A stretch of 64,000 nt of DNA from Hyalangium minutum. GTDB taxonomy: Bacteria; Myxococcota; Myxococcia; Myxococcales; Myxococcaceae. Both the position numbers and the translations under genes were made by a program. Below, one piece after another: positions 17,339 through 30,784 of the stretch; the stretch's first letter is position 1; the number at the start of each line of letters is the position of its first letter. The stretch spans positions 62,001 through 126,000 of the forward strand of contig NZ_JMCB01000022.1 in assembly GCF_000737315.1 (NCBI RefSeq). Reading direction: 5' to 3'. Under the pieces are notes generated by a model. That model saw only the letters and a list, made by a program, of their open reading frames with translations. It searched no databases and was not told the DNA's origin.

Positions 17339-19201
17339 TCAGGCGCTCTGGAGCTCGCCGTTGGACGGGGGCTGTCCGCCGTCGTCCAGCGGCGCCACCG
17401 TCTCGAACGACGTCTCCGCGGAGGGAGGGCCTCCCGGCTCGGGGGGCAGCGGAGAGGGCCCGCTCAAGTCAATGCCCTCCAGGCTGCCGACGCGGAAGAA
17501 GGACGTGAGCCGCCGCAGCGCGTCCGCCTGCACGGCCAGGGCCTCGGCCTCACGCGCCAGGCCCTCCGCGGACGTCGCGTTGGCCGTCGTGGAGCCCTCC
17601 ACGGCCGCCATGGCCTCGCTCATCATGCCCACGGCGGTGGACTGCTCTCGGGTGGAGGCCGCCACCTCGTGCACCAGGTCCGCCGTGCGGCGGATGGAGG
17701 GCACCAGCTCCTTCAGCTGACGGCCGGACTCCTCCGCCACGGCGCGGCTCTGGATGGCCAGCTCGCCAATCTCGCGCGCGGCGGACTTGCTGCGCTCGGC
17801 CAGCCGGCGGACCTCTCCGGCCACCACGCTGAAGCCCTTGCCGTGCTCGCCAGCACGGATGGCCTCGATGGCGGCGTTGAGGGCCAGCATGTTCGTCTGG
17901 TGCGCGAACTCCTCGATGTGCGACACGTTCGTGGAGATGCGGCGCATGGCGTCCACCGTCTCGCCCACCGCCTTGCCGCTCTTCTCGGCGTTGAGGGCGC
18001 CCACGCGGGCCTCCTCCTCCATCTTCCGGCAGCTGTCGGTGTTGCGCAGCACCGCTGCGTTGATCTCCTTGAGCGTGTGCGCGTTCTCCTCGGTGATGGC
18101 GGCCTGGTCCCTCGCGCCATGCGCCAGCGCCTGCGAGGAGGCCGCCAGCAGCGCGGAGGCCGAGGCGAGCGAGGCGGCTCCGGCGCGCACCTCGGCGACA
18201 ATCTTGGTCAGCCGGCCCACCGCCTCTCCCAGCGCCTTGCCCAGCGCATCCTGCTCCGAGCGCGGCATCATCCGCACCGTCAGGTCGCCGTGGGCCAGGC
18301 CCACCGCCATGGCCACCATCTGTTGCATCGAGCGCGCCATGTCCAACGTGGAGCGCAGCAGCAGGGCGATCTCATCCTGGGTGTCCGCCTCCAAGTCCAA
18401 GGCCTGCTCGCCCTCCTCCAGCAGCTCCAGCTCGCCGCGCGACAGGCGCATCGTCATGCGGGTGAGCCGCGCCACCGGCTCGATGATGATGCGAGAAATC
18501 CACCACGCCAGCGCGAGCCCCAGGGCGCTCAGCACCAGCCCGAGCAAGGGCAGCAGCACGCGCAGCCAGAGGAAGGAGCTCTCAGCGCTGTGGTGAGACA
18601 GCTCGGCGAAGCGGCGGTTGAGGGCCTGCAGCCAGCCCGTGGCCTCCGCCAGCCGCGTCAGGGCGGAGTCGAGCTGCTGCTCGTCCACGTGCACCTCGCC
18701 CAGGAGGATCTGCTCCTTCAGGGGCTGGTAGCCCGCGGCGCCCACCTCGAACAGCTCCAGGGCGGAGGCCTCGTCCATCTCCAGCTTCTGCTCGCTCGTG
18801 CTGGACAGGATGTCCATGAAGACGGAGCGCTTGGAGACCACCCACTCCTTCTTGTACCGGGCCACGAAGTCCAGCAGCGCGTCCTGGTGCTCCTTCACCC
18901 GGGCCGCGCGCACGGTGCGCTCTTTCTGAAGGCGCTTGGCTTGCTCTGGGGGGAGGTTGGCCTCGTCCTTCTTGAGGGGGAGTCGCGCCATGAGCCGCAG
19001 CTCACCCGAGAGCGCCTCGCGGTGCGAGTTGGCCTCCTCGAGCGCGACGATGGGCATGAGCATGAAGCCGTACAGGTTGTCGTGGTCGGACTGGAGCGCC
19101 CACGTGCCTCGCAGTGCCACCAGCACCACGAAGACCACCGACACCGGGATGAGTACGGCGATGAGGGCCAGCTTCCAGAACAGCTTGAGACGACGGACCA
19201 T
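17339..19201 (-). CDS. Orphan methyl-accepting chemotaxis protein
   Basis: Two TMs, [41 protein letters not shown]. Confidence 0.93.
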
Positions 19202-19393
19202 GAGTGAGTCCCCCCGGGCGGGACAGGGCCGTCCCGGAGAAGGAGGCCGGAGTATAGAAATTCTGTACCCCCTACAGACAGTCCCTCGTGTGGGGAAAGC
19301 GTCAATGGGCAGGGCGGCCAGGCGTTCCCAGGAGGGGACAGCCCCCTCCCCCTCTCCCGGCGCGCGGTGGACAGTGCGAGAGTGAGGGCTCGC

Positions 19394-22300
19394 ATGCGTC
19401 TCGTTCTTGCCGTCCTGCTTGCCTCCTTGCCGGCCTTCGCGGCTGAGCCCTGGGATGCGCCGCCGTTCACGGCGGATCCGTCCGCTCTTGCTGGAGCCGC
19501 CGCGGCGCTCCCCACCCCTCCGGGGGCCGAAGTCGAAGTGCTGCTGGAAGAGGGCACCTTCTCCTATGACGCGAAGGGCCGGGAGACCTCCACCTCACGG
19601 CTCGTCTACCGCGTGGTGACACAGGAGGGGGCCAAGAACTGGGCGACCATCGGGGTGGGGTATGCCCCGTGGCACGAGGAGCGCCCCGAGGTGCGCGCCC
19701 GCGTCATCACCCCGGATGGGAAGGCGCATGAGCTGGATCCCTCCACGCTGGCGGACACCAGCCCGGCGGACCGGGAGCCGGAGACGCTGTCGGATCAACG
19801 GCTGCTGCGCGGCCCGCTGCCGGCCATCGTGCCGGGAGCGGTGGTGGAGCAGCTGATCACCACGCGCGAGACGGAGAGCGTGTTCGCCAGTGGGGTGGCG
19901 CGGCGCTTCTTCCTCGGCAAGGAGGTGCCGGTGCGGCGGGTGCGGCTGACGCTGGATGCGCCCCAGGGCCAGCCGCTGAACTTCGTGACGCGGGGCCTGC
20001 GCACCAAGCCTCGGAGGGTGGAGGCGAACGGACGCACCCGGCTCGTCTTCGAGCAAGGCCCGCTGGAGCCCTTGGCCATGCCCGAGCCGTTCCTGCCCGC
20101 GGACGCGGTGACGTGGCCGCACATCGCCTTCTCGACGGGCCGGGCCTGGAATGACCTGGCGCGCCGCTACCACGAGACGGTGGAGGCGCAGCTGGCCGGG
20201 GCGAACCTGGAGCGCACCGCGCAGGAGATTCTGGGTGAGGAGAAGCGCCGGGAGGTGGTGGCGGCGAAGCTGACGAAGTGGATCCACTCGCAGGTGCGCT
20301 ACACGAGCCTCCAGTTTGGCGAGGCCGCCGTGGTGCCGCGCCAGCCCGCCGAGGTGCTCGTGCGGCGCTATGGCGATTGCAAGGACCTGTCCACGCTGCT
20401 GGTGGGGCTGCTGCGGGCGTCGGGGGTACCGGCCTCGGTGGCGCTGCTGCGCACGGGGCTGGAGGACGTGCAGGAGTCACTGCCCGGCTTTGGGCTCTTT
20501 GATCACGCCATCGTCTATATACCGGGGACTCCGGCGCTGTGGATCGACGCGACGGACGCCTTTAGCCCGCCGGGGGTGCTGCCTGCGATGGTGCAGGGGC
20601 GGCTGGCGCTGTTGGCGCACCCGGACACGAAGAGCCTGGTGCGCACGCCCGAGCTGCCGGCCTCGGCCAACCTGACTACCACGACGCGCGAGGTGTTCCT
20701 GTCCGAGCGCGGCCCCTCGCGCATCACCGAGGTGAAGGAGTCCATGGGCACGGTGGCCTCCGCGTACCGCGAGCACTTCGCGCTCACCGAGTCCGCCCGG
20801 GTGCGCGAGGGCTACGTGGACTATGTGAAGAGCGCCTTCTCGGCCTCGGACGTGAAGAAGCTGAACCCGGTGGAGCTGGAGTCCCTGGAGAAGCCGTTCC
20901 GCGTGGAGCTGGAGGTGGAGGAGGCCAGCCGAGGCTACACGGACGACAAGGAGGCGGCGGTGGGGCTCGGCGGGGCGTACCTGCTGGGGCGACTGCCGGA
21001 CTACCTGCTGGAGGAGACCTCGGACGAGCAGCCGAGGGGCAAGCGCCGGGGGGAGCTGGTGCTGCTGGAGCCGTACGTGGCCGAGCTGCGCTACCGGGTG
21101 GCGTCTCCGGCGGGCTACACGCCGAAGCCGCTGCCGAAGAACTTCACGCGCAAGATGGGGCCGGCGACGTACTCGGGCGAGTACGCGCTGATGGGGCGCG
21201 AGGTGAACGTCACCTTCCGCTTCGACACGGGCAAGCGCCGCTGGTCCGCGGCCGAGGTGGAGGCCTTCCGCACGTCGTTCGATGCGATGAGCCAGGAGGA
21301 GGAGTCACTGCTCGGGTTCGAGCATGACGGGGCCTCGCTGCTGGCCGAGGGCCACGTGCCCGAGGCGCTCGAGGTGTACCGCCGCATGGTGGAGCTGCAC
21401 CCGAAGGAGGCGCTGCACCGAGGGCAGCTGGCGCTCGCGCTGCTGGAGGCGGGCGCGGGCGAGGAGGCGCGCACCGAGGCCCGCCGGGGCACCGAGGTGG
21501 AGCCGTCCTCGGCGCTGGGCTGGCGCACGCTGGGGTGGGTGCTGCAGCACGACACGCTGGGGCGCCGCTTCAAGCCGGGCTTCGACCACGCGGGGGCGGT
21601 GGCGGCCTACCGGAAGGCGCGGACGCTGGATCCGACGGACTTCGAGACGCGCGGCGACCTGGGCATCCTGCTGGAGTACGGGCCTCAGGGGGATCGCTAT
21701 GGCGAGGACTCACGCCTGGAAGACGCGGTGGCCGAGTACCTGGCGCTGCGGCAGGACCTGAACCGGAAGGACATGGACGACCACCTGCTGCTCGACCTGT
21801 TCCTGCTGGAGGAGTACGCGGAGCTGCTGAAGCGAGCCAGCGGGATGGAGCCTTCGCCGCTGCGCAACAGCGTGCGGCTGAGCGCGTCGGCGATGGTGGA
21901 CGGGGCGGCGGTGGCGGTGAAGAACGCGGCGAAGTGGGTGCCAACCATGGATGCGCGGCGAGAGGCGCTGGAGGATGCGGCGAACCGGCTGATGCGCCTG
22001 CGCCGCTACCCGGAGGCGCACGCGCTGCTGACCGAGGCTGCCAAGGGAGCGCCGGACGCGGTGGAGAAGCAGCGGCGGCTGATTCCACTGGCGAAGGCAG
22101 TGCGCTTCGAGCCCAAGTCATTGAAGGGGGATGATCCGCGCTCGGTGGTGCAGCGGCTCTTCCTGGCGATGCTGGACGACGAGGGCGGCCAGGCCCAGGT
22201 GGAGAGGCTCCTGCACAAGCCATCGCTGGCAGCGGAGCCGGAGCTGGCGGATGAGGTGATGCGGACGGTGCGGGTGCTGCTGAACCGAGGGGTGCTGGCG

Positions 22301-23476
22301 GAGGTGCCGCAGGCGAGCGCGGTGGACATGGCGCTGTCGCTGATGGAGCTGCGAGTGGAGGGGGATGCGAAGCGGGGCTTCCGCGTCCAGTCGCGCCTGC
22401 CGTTCGAGACCTCCAGCGGGAGCGGCACGGAGAACTGGTTCATCGTGCGAGCGGGCACGGAGCTGCGGCTGTTGGGGACGGGGTACGACTACGGAGTGCT
22501 CGGGCAGGAGGCGATGCGGCGGGTGGAGGCGGGGGACCTGGAGGGAGCGCGCCAGTGGCTGGACTGGGCGCGGGACTCGATGCCTTCGACGCTGACGGAG
22601 CAACAGGCAGGGGCCAACTTCCTGCGGCTGTGGAAGAAGGAAGCAACGGCGGGGAAGGAAGAGCTGCGGGTGGCGGCGGCAAGCCTGATGGCGTTCGGCA
22701 AACAGGCGGTGCGAGCGATTCCGTACCTGAGCCTGGCGCGAGAGCGAGCGGCGACGGACACAGAGCGGCGCGGGTTCGATCGGGACTTGCTGGCGGCGTA
22801 CTACCACCTGAAGCGGCTGCCCGAGATGCTGGAGACGGCGGACCGGCTGCTGGAGGTGGCACCGGTGGATGAGTCCGCGTACTACCAGGCGACGTACGCG
22901 CTGCGGCAACTGGACCGGCCGGACGAGCTGACGAAGCGGGCGGAGGCGCGGCTGAAGCTGCTGCCAGACGACGACAAGGCGCTGGAGACGCTGGCGAGCG
23001 TAGCAACGATGCGAGGCGAGCTGGCGAAGGCGCAGGAGTACCGGAGGCGCATCGTCGAGGCGGGCAAGGCAACAGCGCACACGTACAACGAGCTGGCGTG
23101 GAACACGCTGTTCTTGGGGAAAGTGGACGAAGGAGCGGTGGAGGACGCGCTGAAGGCGAACACGCTCACGAGCTACGGGAACGCGTCCTACGTGCACACG
23201 CTGGCAACCATCTACGCGGAGCTGGGCAAAGGACAGGAGGCGCGGCAGCTGCTGCTCAAGTCGCTGGAGTTGCAGGGAGCAAGCGCACTGCAGGCCTACG
23301 ATTGGTACGTGGTGGGGCGAATTGCGGAGACCAACGGACTGCTGGAGGAGGCCCGAGCGGCCTACCAGCGAGCGAAGAGCCCCAAACCGGATATCAACAG
23401 CGTGGACGCGCTAGCGAACTCACGGCTCAAGGTGCTGGAGAAGGGCCCAAGGACGGTGGCGAAGCCCACGCCGTAA
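19394..23476 (+). CDS. DUF3857 / transglutaminase-like / TPR secreted protein
   Basis: Signal peptide; GDCKD (Cys), FDHAI (His), WIDAT (Asp) triad; long TPR-like C-terminal region. Confidence 0.88.
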
Positions 23477-23529
23477 CGTCAGCGCCCTCAAGGCTTCGAG
23501 GCCTTGGGACGCCCAAAGCGCCTAGTCGC

Positions 23530-23835
23530 CTACCGGGCGGCGGGCCCGGAAACAGGAGCAGGCTCGAAGATCTCCGAGACGGACTCAGCAATCGCAGCCC
23601 TGCGCACCCAGACCTTGAGCTGTGAGAGTTCCGAACAAGCCATGATGCGCTGGCGCGCAGTCTCATCCACCGTGAGCCCCCGGGCATCGAGCACCTCCAA
23701 GAGGGCTGCCTGCTCGCCTTGATGGAGCCCCTTCTCAAGCCCTTCTTTCAAGCCCTCTTGCAAGCCCTCCTTGCGTCCCTGGGCGACATACCTGCGGGCG
23801 AACTCGCTCTGGTACTCGTACTTTCCTTGTTGCAT
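23530..23835 (-). CDS. Candidate in-frame internal product (RpnS-like antitoxin, 101 aa)
   Basis: GGAGG-cactg-ATG inside the rpn frame (SD 23845-23841, ATG 23835), just before the EG-repeat helix. Confidence 0.6.
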   Translation of the reverse strand: MQQGKYEYQSEFARRYVAQGRKEGLQEGLKEGLEKGLHQGEQAALLEVLDARGLTVDETARQRIMACSELSQLKVWVRRAAIAESVSEIFEPAPVSGPAAR

Positions 23836-24462
23836 CAGTGCCTCCAGGGCGTTTCGAACCGCCTCGCTGAGCGAGGACACGATCAAGTCAACGTAGAGGG
23901 TGCTGCGCTCTTCATCAAGGCCCCGCACCACTTCAATCACGGTCTGGGCAATCGACACTCCCACCTCCTCATGCCCATGTGCCATGGCGGACAACACTGC
24001 TAGCTCCGGATCCTTCTGAGCGGCCTGTTTGTCTTGAATGACCGGGATGGCGTTGGGCCCTATGACGAGGGGCCGGAGCACGAAATCCGGATGGCCCATC
24101 TCGATGGGCTCTGCGCACCAACGAGCCACGGAAGCATCTGGAGCGACGACGAAGAGCGCCGCGGGACATTTCTCACGCGAGCGCACGCTGGCGAGATACA
24201 GCGGCCACGTCTTCCGCTTGCCCTCGTCACGTGACAACTGCACCTCCACCACGATGGCGAAGATGGGCTTGTCGTCCAGCAGGAGTACCACCAAGTCTGC
24301 TCGATACGCAGTGGGTACGACCTCGGTGAGCTCCGCAGACTGCACCCGCGCCTGAGTCCAGACCGGAAGGTGGAGACCGAGCGCATCACGCAGCAACTCA
24401 GGCGCCAGTTCTGGGCGATTGCGGAACAGGAGCAGGAGACCTTCGTGCTGCATCGAAACCAT
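23530..24462 (-). CDS. Rpn (recombination-promoting nuclease / RpnC-YadD-like) PD-(D/E)xK protein
   Basis: RADLVVLL..IVVEVQLSRD nuclease core; C-terminal GRKEGLQEGLKEGLEKG repeats. Confidence 0.85.
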   Translation of the reverse strand: MVSMQHEGLLLLFRNRPELAPELLRDALGLHLPVWTQARVQSAELTEVVPTAYRADLVVLLLDDKPIFAIVVEVQLSRDEGKRKTWPLYLASVRSREKCPAALFVVAPDASVARWCAEPIEMGHPDFVLRPLVIGPNAIPVIQDKQAAQKDPELAVLSAMAHGHEEVGVSIAQTVIEVVRGLDEERSTLYVDLIVSSLSEAVRNALEALMQQGKYEYQSEFARRYVAQGRKEGLQEGLKEGLEKGLHQGEQAALLEVLDARGLTVDETARQRIMACSELSQLKVWVRRAAIAESVSEIFEPAPVSGPAAR

Positions 24463-25340
24463 GGCGCAGCAAGCTACCTGCTGGGTCTGACAGATCCTGA
24501 CCTACTAGGTTCTGCGACTCACGCTCTACTCACGAGACCATAACCTTGGAGCAAGCACGGTGAGCCCCAACATCGTTGCAAGTAGAGCCCCCCACAGTCC
24601 CACGGTAGCGATGGCCCTCTGGCGTCGGTTCGTCTGAAGGCAAGGGCCCACCCCCTGCCTGTTACCAGCGCTCAGCAATAGGGAGTAAGTGCCAACGACC
24701 GAGCAGTGGTCCGATGCCGCCCAGGCCACAGATGTCATCTGTGGGGCCTAAGCCCTTACCCGTCAGCCCGCCTCCGGTAACAGACGACTCCCCATGCGGT
24801 CTGACGGGCTGACTAGACTTCCTGCCCTCTATGGTGGGTGGGACCCCGATCACTCAGAGCGAATAGGGCCAATTGTCGTTTTCCAATAAATACGGTCACT
24901 TAGCCTTTAAATAAAATGGCTGGCAGCCACTTTTCCTACTTGCAGTATGGGGGAGCAGGCGGTAGATCCCCCAACTGTCCGCAGCACCTGCGGCCGAGTT
25001 CTTTGACAACTACATCCGCATAGCTCAACCAAGCGAGTCAGTGGTCCGTTGTACCCAGTCCGGACTCAAAGTCCGGGCACTGATCGCGGTCCCGAGAGTA
25101 ACGGGATCGTTGTGGGCGAGAAGTCAGCGCCCACATACCTCGAAGCATGCGCATCCTGGTCCTGTGGTCTGGCAAGGTGTGCACTGCGACGGAGCAAGGG
25201 CAGCAATGCTCCGTCGGGGCAGCAGGCAAGGCAGAGTGGTTCCAGTTTCCCCTCACATCGAGACAAGCGCGGCTGGGCAGCACGTGCGAGTTAGGTGGCA
25301 AATTCAAACCCGCCACCCTCGACGTGTGAGGAGAAGCAAA

Positions 25341-25541
25341 ATGCGGAAAAACAAGTTGAAGAAGAAACTCGCCTCCATCCACAACTTCCTGCGAGCGGAG
25401 GTGGAGGCAGGGGAACTGGAATTGGGCTTCATGCAGGAGGTCGAGCGAAGCTTGGTCGAGTTGAGCCTCGCGGTTGAGGCCGACGACTATCAGATGGTGA
25501 AAGTCGCCATCAATGAGGCCGCCAAGAAGTTTCGGCGGTGA
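25341..25541 (+). CDS. Retron-associated small protein (SP, 66 aa), putative toxic effector
   Basis: GAGGAG RBS (25328-25333), ATG 25341; MRKNKLKKKLASIHNFLRAEVEAGELELGFMQEVERSLVELSLAVEADDYQMVKVAINEAAKKFRR; position matches type VI retron SP. Confidence 0.75.
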   Translation: MRKNKLKKKLASIHNFLRAEVEAGELELGFMQEVERSLVELSLAVEADDYQMVKVAINEAAKKFRR

Positions 25542-25578
25542 TCCGGCGAAGCGGAAGTAATGACCGAGAGCCCTAACA

Positions 25579-25640
25579 CACTGTCGTTTGTCTTGATGGG
25601 CCAACCGTGAACGTTGGCCCATCAAGACAGACTGATAGTG
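25579..25640 (+). other. Long hairpin, candidate msd (RT-DNA template)
   Basis: Perfect 17-bp IR TGTCTTGATGGGCCAAC (25589-25605) / GTTGGCCCATCAAGACA (25613-25629), extendable to ~27 bp with two G-U pairs and one bulge. Confidence 0.7.
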
Positions 25641-25648
25641 GGCACACG

Positions 25649-25942
25649 ATGAACTATGGCAGGGCATTGAAGAAGCTGCGAGAGAAACGCAATCTCAAGC
25701 AGAAAGAACTGGCTGAAAAGGCTGCCTTAGACGCTAGTTACGTCTCTCAGATTGAGAATGGGAAACGCGTGCCAAGCACTGCCGCTGTTGAGGCCATTGC
25801 CAAAGCACTCGATGTTCCACTCTATCTACTCATGCTGTTCGCATCTGACGCGGAAGATCTGCGAGGCATTTCGGAAGAGCAGGCTCGCCGCCTCGAAAAT
25901 CAGTTCCTAGACCTGGTCATGAAGGCTGAGCAAGGTGATTGA
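25649..25942 (+). CDS. XRE/Cro-CI family HTH protein (retron accessory)
   Basis: ALKKLREKRNLKQKELAEKAALDASYVSQIENGKRVPS; start ATG 25649 preferred over GTG 25607, which lies in the hairpin loop. Confidence 0.9.
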   Translation: MNYGRALKKLREKRNLKQKELAEKAALDASYVSQIENGKRVPSTAAVEAIAKALDVPLYLLMLFASDAEDLRGISEEQARRLENQFLDLVMKAEQGD

Positions 25943-27016
25943 GTGAGCGAGGCAACGGCACGAACCTTTTACTCCAAGGCTGGGCTTGGCTTTCACTTGA
26001 AGCGTGATTGGTCCACCCTGGAGTCATTAGCAGAACATGCTGGGGCCCACTACCGCTCTTTCGATGAATGGATGGGCAACAAGTGGCGGCATTTTGATGT
26101 GCCCAGTAAGCGACTCGCAGATGTTCAGAGGGAGATCGCTCGTTTCCTCAAGGCCAGAGTAAAATTTCCTGACACCATGCTCGGTGGCCTCAAAGGCGGG
26201 TCTCCCAAGAAAAATGCGGAGGCCCATCGTGGGCAGGGACTTGTGTTCAAACTAGACATCCGGGATTGCTTTCCTAGCATCGGCCACCGAAGGGTCTTCC
26301 GGATGTTCCGTGAGCAATTGAAATTCTCTGATCCGATTTCAAATCTGCTCACAAAACTAACAACCTTCCAGAATCGGCTTCCTCAGGGTTCTCCAGCCAG
26401 TTCTGTTATCGCCAATCTCGTCTTGATGGAACTCCACGAGTCCATCCAGTTGGAATGTGAAGCACTAGGACTGAAATGTACTTTTTTTGTTGATGACATC
26501 ACCCTCTCTGGAGAACGCGTTCGAGAGGTCATTGCACCGGTCGTGAGGTTGGTGCAGCGCCATGGCTTCTCGATGCGCCCATGCAAAGTCCGCCTACTAG
26601 CCGCTCACCGAGAAAAGCTTTCTGTCACTGGTGTTTTAGTGAATAGGAGGCGATTGTCAGTTGGACGGACGCGCAAGAACAAGCTCCGAGCGAGAATCCA
26701 TCAACTCTCACGAGGCGAACGCGTAACCGATTCGGATTTACGCTCTATCCAATCCTCGGTTGTACAGGTAAAACACATCTCAAACCACCAAGGTGAGACG
26801 CTAGAGAGGCTTGTGCAGGAAAAGCTACCGAAGCGCGGTGTCCAGACGCCTAAGGAGCGCGCGAAGAAGATTCGGCGAGTTTGCAAATGTACGCACAAGC
26901 ACCGTCATAAGCGGAATGAGGAATCAGTAACTGCTACTCATCAGCCGGCAAGCAGCGTGGCCGCCGGTCTTCCACGCCAACACTTCGTTCATACTCTAGA
27001 AGCTGGCCTCAGATAA
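25943..27016 (+). CDS. Retron-type reverse transcriptase
   Basis: Region X NAEAH (26213), KLDIRDCFPSI, LPQGSPAS, catalytic FVDD (26486), region Y VTG (26624); abuts the HTH stop. Confidence 0.93.
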   Translation: MSEATARTFYSKAGLGFHLKRDWSTLESLAEHAGAHYRSFDEWMGNKWRHFDVPSKRLADVQREIARFLKARVKFPDTMLGGLKGGSPKKNAEAHRGQGLVFKLDIRDCFPSIGHRRVFRMFREQLKFSDPISNLLTKLTTFQNRLPQGSPASSVIANLVLMELHESIQLECEALGLKCTFFVDDITLSGERVREVIAPVVRLVQRHGFSMRPCKVRLLAAHREKLSVTGVLVNRRRLSVGRTRKNKLRARIHQLSRGERVTDSDLRSIQSSVVQVKHISNHQGETLERLVQEKLPKRGVQTPKERAKKIRRVCKCTHKHRHKRNEESVTATHQPASSVAAGLPRQHFVHTLEAGLR

Positions 27017-27033
27017 CGCGCAGCCCTTGAAGA

Positions 27034-27071
27034 GTGAACGCAGCCTGCTCTCGAAAGCAGGCTGCGTTCAC
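27034..27071. terminator. Bidirectional intrinsic terminator closing the retron operon
   Basis: Perfect 16-bp IR GTGAACGCAGCCTGCT / AGCAGGCTGCGTTCAC between convergent genes, followed by CTTTCC. Confidence 0.85.
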
Positions 27072-27087
27072 CTTTCCTCAATGGACC

Positions 27088-27525
27088 TCAGTTCTCCGCG
27101 AGGACCGCAGGCGCGAAGCCGCCCGGACCGTAGCCCTTGAGCAGATGCACCGACCCGTCGGCCGCACCGGTCACCGACAGGTCCATCCAGCCGTCCGCGT
27201 CGAAGTCACGGGCCACCACCGCACTGCCCCCCCCCACCGGGAAGGACACCCGCGACGCGAGCGCCCCGTCCTGCCCCAGGAACACGCTCACCTCACGGCT
27301 GCCAGGGCTCGCCACCGCGAGGTCCATCTCGCCGTCCCCGTTGAAGTCCGCGCACGCCATCGCTGACGGGAACTCGCCCGTCGCGCTCAGGATGGCCGAC
27401 ACATCGAATGCCGCGTTGTCCATGCACCCACTGGCCCCAGCCGACTCCGAAGCCCCACCGCACCCGATGCTGAAGAGAACCACCACGACAGCCCCGGCCC
27501 ACGACGTCTTGCTCACTGCGGACAT
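27088..27525 (-). CDS. FG-GAP/VCBS-repeat lipoprotein
   Basis: Lipobox FSIGC; ADFNGDGEMDLAVA and RDFDADGWMDLSV repeats. Confidence 0.8.
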   Translation of the reverse strand: MSAVSKTSWAGAVVVVLFSIGCGGASESAGASGCMDNAAFDVSAILSATGEFPSAMACADFNGDGEMDLAVASPGSREVSVFLGQDGALASRVSFPVGGGSAVVARDFDADGWMDLSVTGAADGSVHLLKGYGPGGFAPAVLAEN

Positions 27526-27619
27526 AGCTCCACTCCTGGCGTTGGTATCCGCCCCTCCTCAAGAGGGGCGTGGCAGGTATGGAGAATACGGATCGGTCTG
27601 ACATACCCGGCAGGGAGGC

Positions 27620-28900: not shown

Positions 28901-30784
28901 TTACGCGTCCGGGGCGGACGGCTCGGCGCCCAGCGGCAGCCGGACCGTGAAGGTGGTGCCCTTGCCGGGCTCGCTCTCCACCTCGATGCGCCCGTTGTGC
29001 CGCTGGATGATGACGTCGCAGATGGACAACCCCAGCCCCGTCCCCTGCCCCGCCGGCTTCGTGGTGAAGAAGGGCGTGAAGAGCTTCGCCACCGTCTCAG
29101 GCCCCATCCCCTTCCCCGTATCCTTGATCCGCACCACCGCCTCGTCCCCCTCCTGCCGCGAGCTGATGTAGATCTCCCCGCGCTGCTCCACCGCGTGCCC
29201 CGCGTTCACCAGCAGGTTCATGAACACCTGGTTCAGCTGCGTCGGGAAGCAGCGCACCTCCGGCAGCGGAGCGAACTCCGTCTGCACCTCGCACTTGTAC
29301 TTGAACTCGTGCCGCACCATGCGCAGTGACATCTGCAGCACCTGCGTCAGGTCCGCCCGCTGCGGCGTCCCCGACTCCTCCCGCACGAACGTCTTCAGGC
29401 TGTGCACGAACTCCCGGATGCGGCTGAGCCCCTCGCGCGAGTCTCCCAGCAGCTCCTTCATGTCCATGACCAGCAGCGCCACCCGCTCGCGCTCGCGCAG
29501 CTCCCGCGTCTGCTCCAGTAGCTCCACCACGGCCTCGGGAGGCGCCGCCCCCAGGCGCTGCTCCACCTGCTCGTGCAGCCCGTTCAACTGCAGCAACACC
29601 GCGATGTACTCGTCCAGCGTCGCCACGTTGCTGAACACGTAGCTCACCGGGTTGTTGAGCTCGTGCGCGATGCTCGCCGCCATCTGCCCCAGCGAGGCCA
29701 GCTTCTCCGCCTGGATGAGCTGCGCCTGGCGGGCCTCCAGCTCGCGCGTCACCTGCCGTACCCGCTCCTCGAGCTCCTCCTGCTGGCGGCGCCGCTGATC
29801 CTCCGCCCGCTTCCGCTCGGTGACGTTGCGGACAATGGCCATCGCCTCGTCCAGGCCGCTGCGCACCAGGCGTGCCTCGTAGTGCTGCAGTCCCGAGGGC
29901 AGCTCCAGCGCATACTCGAAGATCGCCAGCGAGCCGCCTTCGCGCAGCTGCCTCAGGTTCTCGGCCAAGGGGTCCTGCAGCGCCGGCGGCAGCGGCATCG
30001 AGAGCAGGTTCTTGCCCACGAACTCGTGCACGGCCATCAGCGGCGCATCCAGCGCGGACGCCTTGAAGGCCAGGCACACCCCATCCAGCCGGAGCCGGAA
30101 GATCATGTCCGGGATGGCTTCGATGAACGCCTGCAGCTGCTCCTGCTGCGTCCTCAGCGCCTGCTCCGTGTCGCGCCGCCGCGCCTCTCCGCGCGCGGCA
30201 TACGTGATGATGCCGCACGTGGTGAGCAGCGGCTTCAAGAAGCTGATCAGCCCCTCGTCGTAACCCCCGGGCCGGTTGGCGATCCCCACCATGCCCACCT
30301 GCTCTCCGCGGACGTGGAACGGCACGCCCAGGAAGGCGCGCAGCGGAGGATGGCCCGGAGGAAGCCCCCCCGAGGCCGGGTGCTTGAAGGGCTCATTGGT
30401 GAGCAGCGGCTCGCCCGACGTCAGCACCTTGCCGAAGAGCGTCTTCAGGTTGCGGAACTCGATGCCCCGCCCACCGCTCTTCTCGTAGTACTCGTTCAGT
30501 TCCTCCGTCCAGGTGATGTTGGTGACGGAGTAGCTGCGCAAGAACGGAGCCCCCTGCGCGTCGTGGACGATCTCCGCGATGAAGCCGTACTCGCTGCGCG
30601 TCTCCCGGAGCATCAGCCTCAGCAGCCGATCGAACAGCGCGGGGTAGTCGCCTTGGGTCACCAGGTCCGCGTGCACCTGGGTCAGCTCGTCCATCAGCCG
30701 GTGGCTGGCCGCCAGGCGCTCTTCCAGGTCCTTCTGCTCCAAACATGCTCCCGTGGGAGTGCGGCCCCAACGGGGCGGTTCCAC
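28901..30784 (-). CDS. GAF-PAS sensor histidine kinase
   Basis: GAF (GLPPGHPPLRAFLGVP), PAS, AHELNNP H-box, QVFMNLLVNA, GTGLGL; start may be TTG 30742. Confidence 0.92.
   Translation of the reverse strand: MEPPRWGRTPTGACLEQKDLEERLAASHRLMDELTQVHADLVTQGDYPALFDRLLRLMLRETRSEYGFIAEIVHDAQGAPFLRSYSVTNITWTEELNEYYEKSGGRGIEFRNLKTLFGKVLTSGEPLLTNEPFKHPASGGLPPGHPPLRAFLGVPFHVRGEQVGMVGIANRPGGYDEGLISFLKPLLTTCGIITYAARGEARRRDTEQALRTQQEQLQAFIEAIPDMIFRLRLDGVCLAFKASALDAPLMAVHEFVGKNLLSMPLPPALQDPLAENLRQLREGGSLAIFEYALELPSGLQHYEARLVRSGLDEAMAIVRNVTERKRAEDQRRRQQEELEERVRQVTRELEARQAQLIQAEKLASLGQMAASIAHELNNPVSYVFSNVATLDEYIAVLLQLNGLHEQVEQRLGAAPPEAVVELLEQTRELRERERVALLVMDMKELLGDSREGLSRIREFVHSLKTFVREESGTPQRADLTQVLQMSLRMVRHEFKYKCEVQTEFAPLPEVRCFPTQLNQVFMNLLVNAGHAVEQRGEIYISSRQEGDEAVVRIKDTGKGMGPETVAKLFTPFFTTKPAGQGTGLGLSICDVIIQRHNGRIEVESEPGKGTTFTVRLPLGAEPSAPDA

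What the first reader, a model, noticed from the sequence alone, without database searches (positions are those of the whole stretch)
25041..27071. Type VI-like retron defence system (structured RNA - small protein - XRE HTH - RT) in a myxobacterium
Seen: retron RT hallmarks (NAEAH, FVDD, VTG), an abutting XRE gene, a 66-aa ORF, heavily structured flanks and a terminator, in AT-richer DNA. Established: retrons with HTH plus small-protein partners are the type VI class of anti-phage retrons. This architecture differs from the classical stand-alone myxobacterial msDNA retrons (Mx162/Mx65/Sa163). Inference: an intact, horizontally acquired abortive-infection system with an uncharacterised effector.
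Basis: partly seen in the sequence, partly recalled or inferred. Interest (0 to 1): 0.9.

Follow-up and report, generated by a model that had tools for sequence, protein, structure and literature searches.

The report
Type VI retron in a myxobacterium
This is an intact anti-phage retron of the known type VI class (structured RNA, small toxin-like protein, HTH regulator, reverse transcriptase), sitting in a 3.6-kb piece of foreign DNA in a Hyalangium-like myxobacterium. It is a correct call and a rare, divergent member of the class, but not a new kind of system.

Summary
Window 24910-27071 (+) carries a conserved structured non-coding RNA, a 66-aa ORF (SP, 25341-25541), an XRE-type HTH gene (25649-25942) and an abutting retron RT (25943-27016) with NAEAH, FVDD and VTG.

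- **Classification.** PADLOC models call the RT RT_VI (1.4e-66; next best 3.9e-46) and the HTH HTH_VI (1.7e-25).
- **Relatives.** Five metagenomic relatives with DNA (RT 51-63% identical) keep the same SP-HTH-RT order. Their upstream RNA is also conserved: 180 consensus pairs, 92% paired, 37 with compensatory changes, none of 500 shuffles as good.
- **Direct repeat.** An 8-nt repeat changes in step in both copies. Repeats at the equivalent position occur in other type VI loci, matching the repeat reported for the Retron-Vpa2 hybrid RNA.
- **Host and acquisition.** The flanks are syntenic with Hyalangium versicolor, which lacks the 3.6-kb segment (GC 0.57 against 0.69). This supports horizontal acquisition.

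Type VI retrons were defined in 2020, and two members (Vpa2, Sen3) have since been characterised, with SP shown to be the toxin. This is therefore a new, divergent member with a rare three-helix SP family, not a new architecture. Reverse-transcribed DNA, toxicity and defence remain untested. Interest is moderate to low.

The parts
23477..27087 (.). 3.6-kb insertion relative to Hyalangium versicolor. It holds a YhgA/Rpn-like gene (23530-24462, minus strand) and the retron. GC is 0.57 against 0.69 for the window.
   Evidence: Window 17438-23474 and 27112-27604 lie 145 bp apart in L009.
24912..25340 (+). Non-coding part of the putative hybrid RNA (msr-msd-like domain). It is a multi-branch fold closed by helix 25023-25039 / 25262-25278.
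   Evidence: Conserved in 5 relatives, with homology starting sharply at 24907-24913. The consensus structure shows compensatory changes. The plus strand folds better than the minus strand, -173 against -141 kcal/mol.
24917..24929 (+). Conserved 5-bp stem-loop (TGGCT-ggc-AGCCA) at the 5' edge of the element.
   Evidence: The stem is invariant in 6/6 sequences and the loop is variable. A 5-bp stem-loop at the same position is described for cl2075 type VI retrons.
24992..25004 (+). 5' arm of a 12-bp long-range helix. It is followed by an invariant G at 25005.
   Evidence: Pairs with 25362-25373. Cells are 94% paired, and the window shows a C-G to U-A double change.
25362..25373 (+). 3' arm of the long-range helix, lying inside SP codons 8-11.
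25217..25224 (+). Direct repeat copy 1 (GGGCAGCA). The window has an extra copy at 25198-25205.
25275..25282 (+). Direct repeat copy 2 (GGGCAGCA), 66 nt upstream of the SP AUG.
   Evidence: Both copies read GGGCGGCA in L003-L005, a concerted change. Repeats at the equivalent position occur in L008, L089, L091, L101 and L102.
25244..25262 (+). Candidate anti-RBS (GUUUCCCCUCACAUCGAGA); CACATCGAGAC is invariant.
   Evidence: Pairs with CUCGACGUGUGAGGAGAA (the SP RBS) in the window's minimum-energy fold. Pairing is inconsistent across relatives.
25341..25541 (+). SP: a 66-aa small protein and putative toxin/effector. RBS GAGGAG lies at 25328-25333.
   Evidence: The ORF is kept in all 6 loci with the same start and stop, and its indels are multiples of 3. 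AlphaFold2 predicts a three-helix bundle, pLDDT 84.9. The SP profile matches SPs of more distant type VI loci at hhalign probability 90.8%.
25579..25640 (+). 28-bp hairpin between the SP stop and the HTH start. Its base reaches the HTH RBS region.
   Evidence: z = -9.8. 9 pairs show compensatory changes. The only Rfam matches are spurious sub-threshold miRNA hits.
25649..25942 (+). XRE/Cro-C1 HTH protein, 97 aa.
   Evidence: PADLOC HTH_VI 1.7e-25 and Pfam HTH_3 8.6e-17. Relatives are 97-98 aa.
25943..27016 (+). Retron reverse transcriptase, 357 aa, with NAEAH, FVDD and VTG.
   Evidence: PADLOC RT_VI 1.4e-66, covering profile positions 7-277 of 279. All the best PDB matches are retron RTs. NCBIfam retron St85 scores 4e-41 against 4e-7 for group II intron RT.
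27034..27071 (.). 16-bp GC-rich hairpin between the convergent RT and FG-GAP genes. It is terminator-like but lacks a clear T-run.

Best explanation
This is an intact type VI retron acquired by horizontal transfer into an Archangiaceae (Hyalangium-like) chromosome.

**Proposed parts and roles.**
- One plus-strand transcript of about 730 nt (roughly 24912-25645) would combine a structured msr-msd-like RNA with the coding sequence of a 66-aa three-helix protein, SP. This is a 'hybrid RNA'.
- Downstream lie an XRE HTH protein and the retron RT.

**Mechanism, by analogy with Retron-Vpa2 and Retron-Sen3.**
- SP is the toxic effector.
- The HTH keeps the system silent, either by repressing reverse transcription or by neutralising SP.
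- The RT copies part of the RNA into single-stranded DNA.
- Phage interference with recombination or RecBCD functions lets this DNA accumulate or act, SP is released, and the infected cell stops growing.

**Which route is more likely here.** The covarying 8-nt direct repeat, the conserved anti-RBS sequence and the pairing of the start codon favour the Vpa2-type route. In that route the reverse-transcribed copy of repeat 1 pairs with repeat 2 and opens the SP translation start.

**Shown versus inferred.**
- Shown here: family assignment, gene order, conservation and covariation of the RNA, the repeats, and the insertion.
- Inferred: transcription, msDNA, toxicity, the trigger and defence.
- My probabilities: type VI retron about 0.93; anti-phage toxin-antitoxin-like function about 0.75; Vpa2-type translational control about 0.45.
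For: - **Classification:** the RT and HTH hit the type VI-specific models best. All 25 top PADLOC hits, and all PDB hits, are retron RTs.
- **Gene order:** SP(64-66 aa)-HTH(97-98 aa)-RT is kept in the relatives L001, L002, L004 and L005 and in the gene table of P0005. In L003 the SP lies inside a longer called ORF. The order is also kept in the more distant L008 and L089-L091.
- **RNA:** 180 pairs, 92% paired against 39-47% in slid controls; 37 pairs with double changes against 20.2 +/- 2.8 in shuffles, 0 of 500 shuffles as good. G-U outnumbers A-C 126 to 23, and the plus strand folds better.
- **Direct repeat:** it changes in step in both copies. Repeats of 7-11 nt at the equivalent position occur in five other RT_VI lineages, each reached by 0-6% of shuffles. 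The same feature is described for Vpa2.
- **Features shared with Sen3:** a 5' 5-bp stem-loop and a short stem between the following bases and the HTH RBS.
- **SP:** a three-helix bundle, as reported for type VI SPs.
- **Insertion and host:**
Against: - There are no expression, msDNA or phenotype data.
- Only six sequences in two subclades were available, so the covariation rests on few independent events. The structure was derived from the same alignment on which it was then scored.
- Predicted RBS sequestration is inconsistent: unpaired probability 0.11-0.88 across the six RNAs.
- The repeat-position test used limits chosen after looking at the data.
- The RT scores lower on RT_VI (223 bits) than core members do (299-346 bits), so it sits at the edge of the family.
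- SP is hydrophilic and unlike the hydrophobic SP-type ORFs of L101 and L102. It matches no PADLOC, Pfam or NCBIfam model.
- No promoter was found, and the 3' hairpin lacks a T-run.
Confidence: 0.8

Rival explanations
1. It is a type VI retron that works as Retron-Sen3 does. Single-stranded DNA and SP are made constitutively, HTH neutralises SP protein directly as a post-translational antitoxin, and defence fires when phage inhibits RecBCD. Translation control by msDNA plays no part.
For: - The 5' 5-bp stem-loop and the pairing of the HTH RBS with the bases just after it are features described for the Sen3 (cl2075) lineage.
- SP is a soluble amphipathic helical protein, more like the description of cl2075 SPs than like the hydrophobic L101/L102 SPs.
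- Thermodynamic folding leaves the SP RBS open in three of the six RNAs.
Against: - The covarying direct repeat and the conserved anti-RBS and start-codon pairings have no role in this model.
- The SP shows no detectable sequence link to cl2075, though this was not tested because no reference sequences were on hand.
- The two models are not mutually exclusive.
Confidence: 0.35
2. The locus is an inactive relic, or a retron domesticated for a function other than defence.
For: - No functional data exist.
- The family is tiny: 7 close RT relatives and 4 SP cluster representatives among 1.84 billion.
- No promoter was detected.
Against: - All three ORFs are full length against their profiles and their relatives.
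- The catalytic motifs are intact.
- The RNA and the ORFs are under visible constraint across relatives that share only 67-71% nucleotide identity.
Confidence: 0.07
3. The RT is not a retron RT. It would instead be a group II intron, DGR, Abi or DRT/UG enzyme, and the neighbouring genes are coincidental.
For: There are weak NCBIfam hits to group II RT (4e-7), Drt3a (7e-6) and Drt2 (3.5e-5).
Against: - Retron models score 30-60 orders of magnitude better.
- The retron-specific NAxxH and VTG motifs are present.
- The neighbours are conserved with the RT in every relative.
Confidence: 0.02
4. The 25579-25640 inverted repeat is a DNA operator for the HTH dimer (transcriptional autoregulation), not an RNA element.
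For: - It is a near-perfect palindrome directly upstream of the HTH gene, with conserved outer half-sites TGTCTTGA / TCAAGACA.
- G-U against A-C counts in this helix are only 11 to 6, so the strand is not decided.
Against: - The inner 10 bp covary freely, which suits a stem better than a recognition sequence.
- The arms are 20-28 bp long with a 7-nt loop, and the hairpin lies inside the region that Sen3 and Vpa2 transcripts cover.
- Both roles could coexist.
Confidence: 0.25

Closest known systems
Retron-Vpa2 (Vibrio parahaemolyticus; type VI, 'Large' lineage; bioRxiv 10.1101/2025.10.22.683967)
   Same: - The order is structured RNA, SP, HTH, RT.
- The SP coding sequence is embedded in a conserved folded RNA with long-range pairings.
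- A short direct repeat lies upstream of the SP start.
[quoted passage not shown]
   Different: - The RT is only distantly related. The Vpa2 RT itself was not compared; RT_VI scores 223 bits here against 299-346 for the core-type loci L101 and L102.
- SP here is 66 aa, hydrophilic and a three-helix bundle. The Vpa2 SP is 55 aa with a hydrophobic aromatic C-terminus.
- The repeat is 8 nt with a different sequence.
- The host is Myxococcota, and nothing has been tested experimentally.
Retron-Sen3 and the cl2075 lineage (Salmonella/Yersinia; bioRxiv 10.64898/2026.04.27.721009)
   Same: - SP-HTH-RT gene order.
- A conserved 5-bp stem-loop at the 5' edge of the ncRNA.
- A short stem between the bases after that stem-loop and the HTH RBS.
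- RNA structure running through the SP coding sequence.
- A helical, amphipathic SP.
   Different: - SP here is 66 aa, against 79 aa with an N-terminal extension in Sen3.
- No sequence similarity could be tested.
- The long-range helix here ends inside the SP coding sequence (codons 8-11) rather than after the SP stop.
- The host phylum differs.
Type VI retrons as defined by Mestre et al. 2020 (PMC7736814) and PADLOC retron_VI
   Same: - The RT matches RT_VI best.
- A Cro/C1 HTH of 91-110 aa lies upstream of the RT.
- There is a small helical accessory protein with a three-helix-bundle model.
   Different: SP is shorter (64-66 aa against 75-79 aa) and forms its own small family. It was not assigned to cl2075, cl2760, cl3272 or cl3897.
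Classical myxobacterial retrons (Mx162, Mx65, Sa163; vertically inherited; type XIII is the type linked to vertical inheritance in myxobacteria in PMC7736814)
   Same: The host phylum is the same, and all are retron RTs with the VTG and NAxxH motifs.
   Different: - RT_XIII scores 139 bits against 223 for RT_VI.
- This locus has SP and HTH partners.
- It lies in a low-GC insertion that a close relative lacks, so it was not inherited vertically.

Membership tests
Type VI retron | The RT belongs to the type VI RT clade | tested here: met
   PADLOC RT_VI scores 1.4e-66 (222.6 bits, profile positions 7-277 of 279); the next model, RT_II-A, scores 155.6 bits. The same ranking holds for relatives P0002 and P0008. 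This is HMM ranking only; no reference phylogeny was run.
Type VI retron | Retron RT signature motifs (NAxxH, catalytic YxDD-type, VTG) | tested here: met
   NAEAH, FVDD and VTG can be read in the translation. They are conserved across the clade: N91, A92, H95, D184, D185, T229 and G230 are invariant.
Type VI retron | A Cro/C1-type HTH protein (cluster 2_1, 91-110 aa) immediately upstream of, or overlapping, the RT | tested here: met
   HTH_VI scores 1.7e-25 over profile positions 1-90 of 92. The protein is 97 aa and its stop codon abuts the RT start.
Type VI retron | A small helical accessory protein (SP) upstream of the HTH | tested here: met
   The 66-aa ORF is conserved in all relatives. 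The model is a three-helix bundle with pLDDT 84.9. hhalign against SPs of L008 and L089-L091 gives probability 90.8%.
Type VI retron | SP belongs to a named SP cluster (cl2075, cl2760, cl3272, cl3897) | not tested
   No reference sequences of these clusters were available. PADLOC, Pfam and NCBIfam have no model that matches.
Type VI retron | A conserved structured ncRNA upstream of SP that extends over the SP coding sequence (hybrid RNA) | tested here: met
   Consensus structure: 92% of cells paired, 37 pairs with double changes, 0 of 500 shuffles as good. z = -9.1. Homology starts at 24910. The transcript itself was not observed.
Type VI retron | A short direct repeat, one copy in the msd-like part and one near the SP translation start region (Vpa2-type hybrid RNA) | tested here: met
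   GGGCAGCA occurs at 25217 and 25275. Both copies change in step in L003-L005. Repeats at the equivalent position occur in 5 other RT_VI lineages. The positional limits were chosen after looking at the data.
Type VI retron | RT-dependent single-stranded DNA, SP toxicity, protection against phage | not testable with these tools
   These need experiments.
Classical myxobacterial retron (Mx162 type / type XIII) | RT of the type XIII clade, with the type XIII partner gene and vertical inheritance | tested here: not met
   RT_XIII scores 139.4 bits against 222.6 for RT_VI. The partners are SP and HTH. The locus is absent from the syntenic site in Hyalangium versicolor.
Non-retron RTs (group II intron, DRT/UG, Abi, DGR) | Best match to those families | tested here: not met
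   NCBIfam: group II 4e-7, Drt3a 7e-6, Drt2 3.5e-5, against retron St85 at 4.3e-41.

The most novel reading that the evidence does not exclude
This rare clade is a distinct type VI sub-lineage, known so far from this myxobacterial genome and a few metagenome contigs of unknown host. Its effector is a soluble three-helix SP of a new family with a new cellular target. Its hybrid RNA is a two-state switch: cDNA made from repeat copy 1 invades the helix containing copy 2, flipping the RNA from the RBS/AUG-sequestered fold to the open fold. If so, comparative data from a distant lineage would independently support, and sharpen, the msDNA-riboregulator model that has so far been proposed for Vpa2 alone.
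Probability: 0.3. Interest if true: 0.5.

Novelty: new member of a known kind. Interest (0 to 1): 0.33.

Why it matters
**What it adds.**
- It adds a Myxococcota host to type VI retrons. Recent surveys that I read list them mainly in Pseudomonadota, Bacteroidota and Bacillota.
- It lies in the phylum where retrons were first discovered, yet it is of a different, horizontally acquired type.
- The conserved RNA with a direct repeat that changes in step offers a second, independent system for testing whether reverse-transcribed DNA switches on toxin translation.
- The SP is a hydrophilic three-helix protein, unlike the hydrophobic SP-type ORFs of the two core type VI loci compared here (L101, L102). 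Its target may therefore differ.

**What it does not add.** The class, its gene order and its general logic are already published, so this opens no new category.

Tried and rejected
- **Rfam** on 23-29 kb gave only sub-threshold miRNA matches to the 25581-25637 hairpin, on both strands (32.7 bits against a gathering score of 90). I treat these as spurious.
- **tRNA scan:** no tRNA in the window that could serve as an integration site.
- **Promoter and terminator scan:** nothing beyond chance. The only promoter-like site lies inside the RT gene.
- **The 166-aa ORF 25041-25541** was rejected. Its upstream part aligns as non-coding RNA with non-triplet indels in relatives.
- **Genome collection scan with the RT:** no relative found.
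- **Viral contigs:** the RT alignment found none. Two ncRNA motifs gave 10 matches, but these loci encode no RT, HTH or SP and show no RNA homology, so they are chance matches.
- **Metagenome scan:** only relatives at 30-40% identity.
- **Word-indexed protein search with SP:** found only the query itself. The full HMMER scan found 4 cluster representatives.
- **Foldseek of the SP model against the PDB:** nothing below E = 0.8, only generic helical bundles.
- **Exact 6-9-mers repeated in all six RNAs:** none. The repeat became visible only when the two copies were allowed to change together.
- **Mestre 2020 supplementary tables:** not held, so host lists and SP cluster sequences could not be checked.
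- **Low-GC loci L092-L099:** these look type VI-like in gene order, but the one RT tested (L092) scores best as RT_III-A. I left the group out of the type VI comparisons.
- **The 310-aa neighbour:** considered as a system component and rejected. It belongs to a large YhgA/Rpn-like family of Archangiaceae and is absent from the retron's relatives.
Full report
**1. Observation.** The reported features are all in the sequence.
- ORF 25943-27016 (357 aa, GTG start) contains NAEAH, FVDD and VTG. It matches Pfam RVT_1 (1.1e-15).
- Directly before it lies an XRE-type HTH gene. The longest ORF starts at 25607. However, the PADLOC HTH_VI profile begins at residue 16 of that ORF, and all relatives begin MNYG. 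The real start is therefore the ATG at 25649, giving 97 aa.
- The 66-aa ORF is 25341-25541, with GAGGAG 8 nt upstream of its ATG.
- The DNA is AT-richer. GC falls to 0.50-0.58 against 0.69 for the window, and this is the only such trough in the 64 kb.
- The flanks are strongly structured. RNA 24912-25648 folds at -331 kcal/mol, z = -9.1. The hairpin at 25579-25640 has z = -9.8, and the hairpin after the RT (27034-27071) has z = -5.8.
- That last hairpin has no proper T-run, and the consensus scan did not list it. 'Terminator' is plausible but not shown.
- The finding's start coordinate (25041) is the start of a spurious 166-aa ORF. The conserved element begins at about 24910.

**2. Classification.**
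- Against PADLOC, the RT scores best with RT_VI (1.4e-66, 222.6 bits, nearly the full profile). The next model, RT_II-A, reaches 155.6 bits and RT_XIII 139.4.
- The HTH scores best with HTH_VI (1.7e-25).
- NCBIfam gives retron St85 at 4e-41, against group II intron RT at 4e-7 and Drt2/Drt3a at about 1e-5.
- All PDB sequence matches are retron RTs: Ec86, Kva2, Ec67, Ec83 and Ec78.
- Core type VI loci score higher on the same model: 346 bits for the retron of Yersinia phage vB_YenM_56.17 and 299 for an Agrobacterium rubi plasmid locus. The window's RT thus sits towards the edge of the family.

**3. Relatives.**
- The RT family is small. Among 5.8 billion protein clusters there are only seven close relatives (51-63% identity), all from metagenome contigs. 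The next tier is at 30-42%.
- Five contigs with DNA (L001-L005), plus the gene table of a sixth relative, keep the same order: SP of 64-66 aa, HTH of 97-98 aa, then RT. In L003 the SP lies inside a longer called ORF. The more distant L008 and L089-L091 keep the order too.
- The SP ORF keeps its start, its stop and its length. Its only indel is two codons. Pairwise differences run 302/234/382 at codon positions 1/2/3.
- A full HMMER scan of 1.84 billion cluster representatives found only four SP relatives.
- A profile of this SP family matches the SPs of L008 and L089-L091 at hhalign probability 90.8% (E 1.2e-6).
- AlphaFold2 models SP as a three-helix bundle: H2-22, H28-46, H50-64, mean pLDDT 84.9. 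This is the fold reported for type VI accessory proteins. Foldseek found no informative match.
- Unlike the SP-type ORFs of L101 and L102, which have a basic N-terminus and a hydrophobic C-terminal helix, this SP is hydrophilic and amphipathic.

**4. The RNA.**
- Nucleotide homology between the window and its relatives starts sharply at 24907-24913. It runs through 430 nt of non-coding sequence into SP.
- The RNAalifold consensus has 180 pairs. 92% of cells are paired, against 39-47% when partners are slid by 1-3 columns. 37 pairs carry changes on both sides, against 20.2 +/- 2.8 in column shuffles; no shuffle of 500 reached the observed value on any measure.
- G-U cells outnumber A-C cells 126 to 23. 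The plus strand folds better than the minus strand, -173 against -141 kcal/mol. This fits an RNA co-oriented with the genes.
- Caveats: there are six sequences in two subclades, and the structure was derived from the same alignment.
- Notable elements:
  - a 5-bp stem-loop at 24917-24929;
  - a short stem between 24941-24944 and the HTH RBS region at 25641-25644;
  - a 12-bp long-range helix, 24992-25004 with 25362-25373 (inside SP codons 8-11), with a C-G to U-A double change in the window;
  - a multi-branch domain closed by 25023-25039 / 25262-25278;
  - a 28-bp hairpin at 25579-25640 with nine compensatory pairs.
- The first two elements match what Garcia-Rodriguez et al. describe for the Sen3 lineage. 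The overall layout, with the SP coding sequence embedded in a folded RNA, matches the Vpa2 'hybrid RNA'.

**5. Direct repeat and translation start.**
- An 8-nt repeat, GGGCAGCA, occurs at 25217 and 25275. In L003-L005 both copies read GGGCGGCA, which is a concerted change.
- Repeats of 7-11 nt at the equivalent place occur in L008 (11 nt), L089, L091, L101 and L102. 'Equivalent' means the second copy lies 44-76 nt before the SP AUG and the spacing is 55-67 nt. Each is reached by 0-6% of dinucleotide shuffles. L090 has none. These RTs all score best as RT_VI.
- The positional limits were set after seeing the data, so these numbers are indicative only.
- Zhang et al. report a conserved 7-nt direct repeat in type VI hybrid RNAs. 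They propose that the reverse-transcribed copy of one repeat pairs with the other to free the SP start.
- In the window's minimum-energy fold, the invariant UUUCCCCUCACAUCGAG (25244-25262) pairs with the SP RBS. In four of six RNAs the start codon AUGCG pairs with the invariant CGCAU (25017-25021).
- Partition-function folding gives two alternative states across the six RNAs. The sequestration claim is therefore suggestive, not settled.
- Which hairpin serves as template, and where the priming G lies, cannot be decided from sequence.

**6. Host and acquisition.**
- The neighbouring MFS transporter is 80% identical to that of Hyalangium versicolor and 79% to that of an Archangium MAG.
- Window 17438-23474 and 27112-27604 align to H. 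versicolor at 80% and 69% nucleotide identity, where they lie only 145 bp apart.
- The window thus carries a 3.6-kb insertion (23477-27087) with GC 0.57.
- The insertion holds the retron and a 310-aa gene on the other strand. That gene belongs to a very large YhgA/Rpn-like 'putative transposase' family of Archangiaceae. None of the retron's relatives has it, so I do not count it as part of the system.
- No tRNA, integrase or flanking repeat was found.
- No member of this clade was found in viral contigs, although L002 sits next to a Bro-N/P63C gene.

**7. Mechanism.**
- By homology, this is a toxin-antitoxin-like abortive-infection system. SP is the toxin, HTH is the silencer, and the RT with its RNA is the sensing and switching part.
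- Two published variants exist:
  - **Vpa2:** msDNA is kept low by HTH and by host nucleases. It accumulates when phage recombination proteins are present and derepresses SP translation.
  - **Sen3:** DNA and SP are made constitutively. HTH neutralises SP, and RecBCD inhibition is the trigger.
- The repeat and the anti-RBS and AUG pairings tilt this locus towards the Vpa2 route. The 5' stem-loop, the HTH-RBS stem and the soluble SP resemble Sen3. I put about 0.45 on Vpa2-type control and about 0.35 on Sen3-type control; the two may coexist.
- All of this is inference.

**8. Verdict.** The class has been known since 2020 (PMC7736814), and its effector was characterised in 2025-2026 preprints. 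'Uncharacterised effector' and an interest of 0.9 are therefore too high. This is a new, divergent and rare member of a known kind. Its modest added value is the host phylum, its own SP family, and a cleanly conserved RNA with a covarying repeat that could be used to test the msDNA-riboregulator idea.

Noticed in passing
window 23530-24462 (-): A 310-aa protein of a very large YhgA/Rpn-like 'putative transposase' family. It has more than 2340 homologs, with many paralogs in Hyalangium, Stigmatella and Pyxidicoccus. It lies in the same 3.6-kb insertion as the retron, but none of the retron's relatives has it.
   Followed up: partly
window 28901-30784 (-): A 627-aa histidine kinase gene is missing from the syntenic site of Hyalangium versicolor. 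Window 28863 and 30888 correspond to positions 37 bp apart in L009. This is a second indel close to the retron.
   Followed up: no
window 26798-27016 (RT residues 286-357): The RT has a C-terminal tail beyond the PADLOC RT_VI profile. It is poorly conserved except for an invariant Cys and His in a basic C-x-x-T-H-K-H-R-like motif shared by all eight clade members.
   Followed up: no
window 25198-25205: A third copy of the 8-nt repeat GGGCAGCA sits in the loop of the hairpin at 25187-25216. Only the window has it, not the relatives.
   Followed up: partly
L092-L099 (low-GC metagenome loci): These loci have a 103-aa small ORF, an HTH and an RT in the type VI order. The one RT tested (L092) scores best with PADLOC RT_III-A (222 bits) over RT_VI (203). 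The three loci tested (L092, L094, L095) lack the direct repeat at the equivalent position.
   Followed up: partly
L002 390-1193; L003 6960-7718; L004 2882-3508: One relative of the retron lies beside a Bro-N/P63C (phage-type) gene. Two others share a convergent glutathione S-transferase gene that overlaps the 3' end of the RT.
   Followed up: no
L101 1919-2110 (Agrobacterium rubi plasmid pW2_73_4): An unannotated 63-aa ORF with a basic N-terminus and a hydrophobic C-terminal helix lies just upstream of the annotated HTH-RT pair. It is probably the SP of that type VI retron and was missed by annotation.
   Followed up: partly
window 19367-23476 (+): A 1369-aa TPR-rich protein lies directly upstream of the insertion and is conserved in H. 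versicolor. It shows only weak family matches (PEP-CTERM TPR lipoprotein, C39-like peptidase).
   Followed up: no
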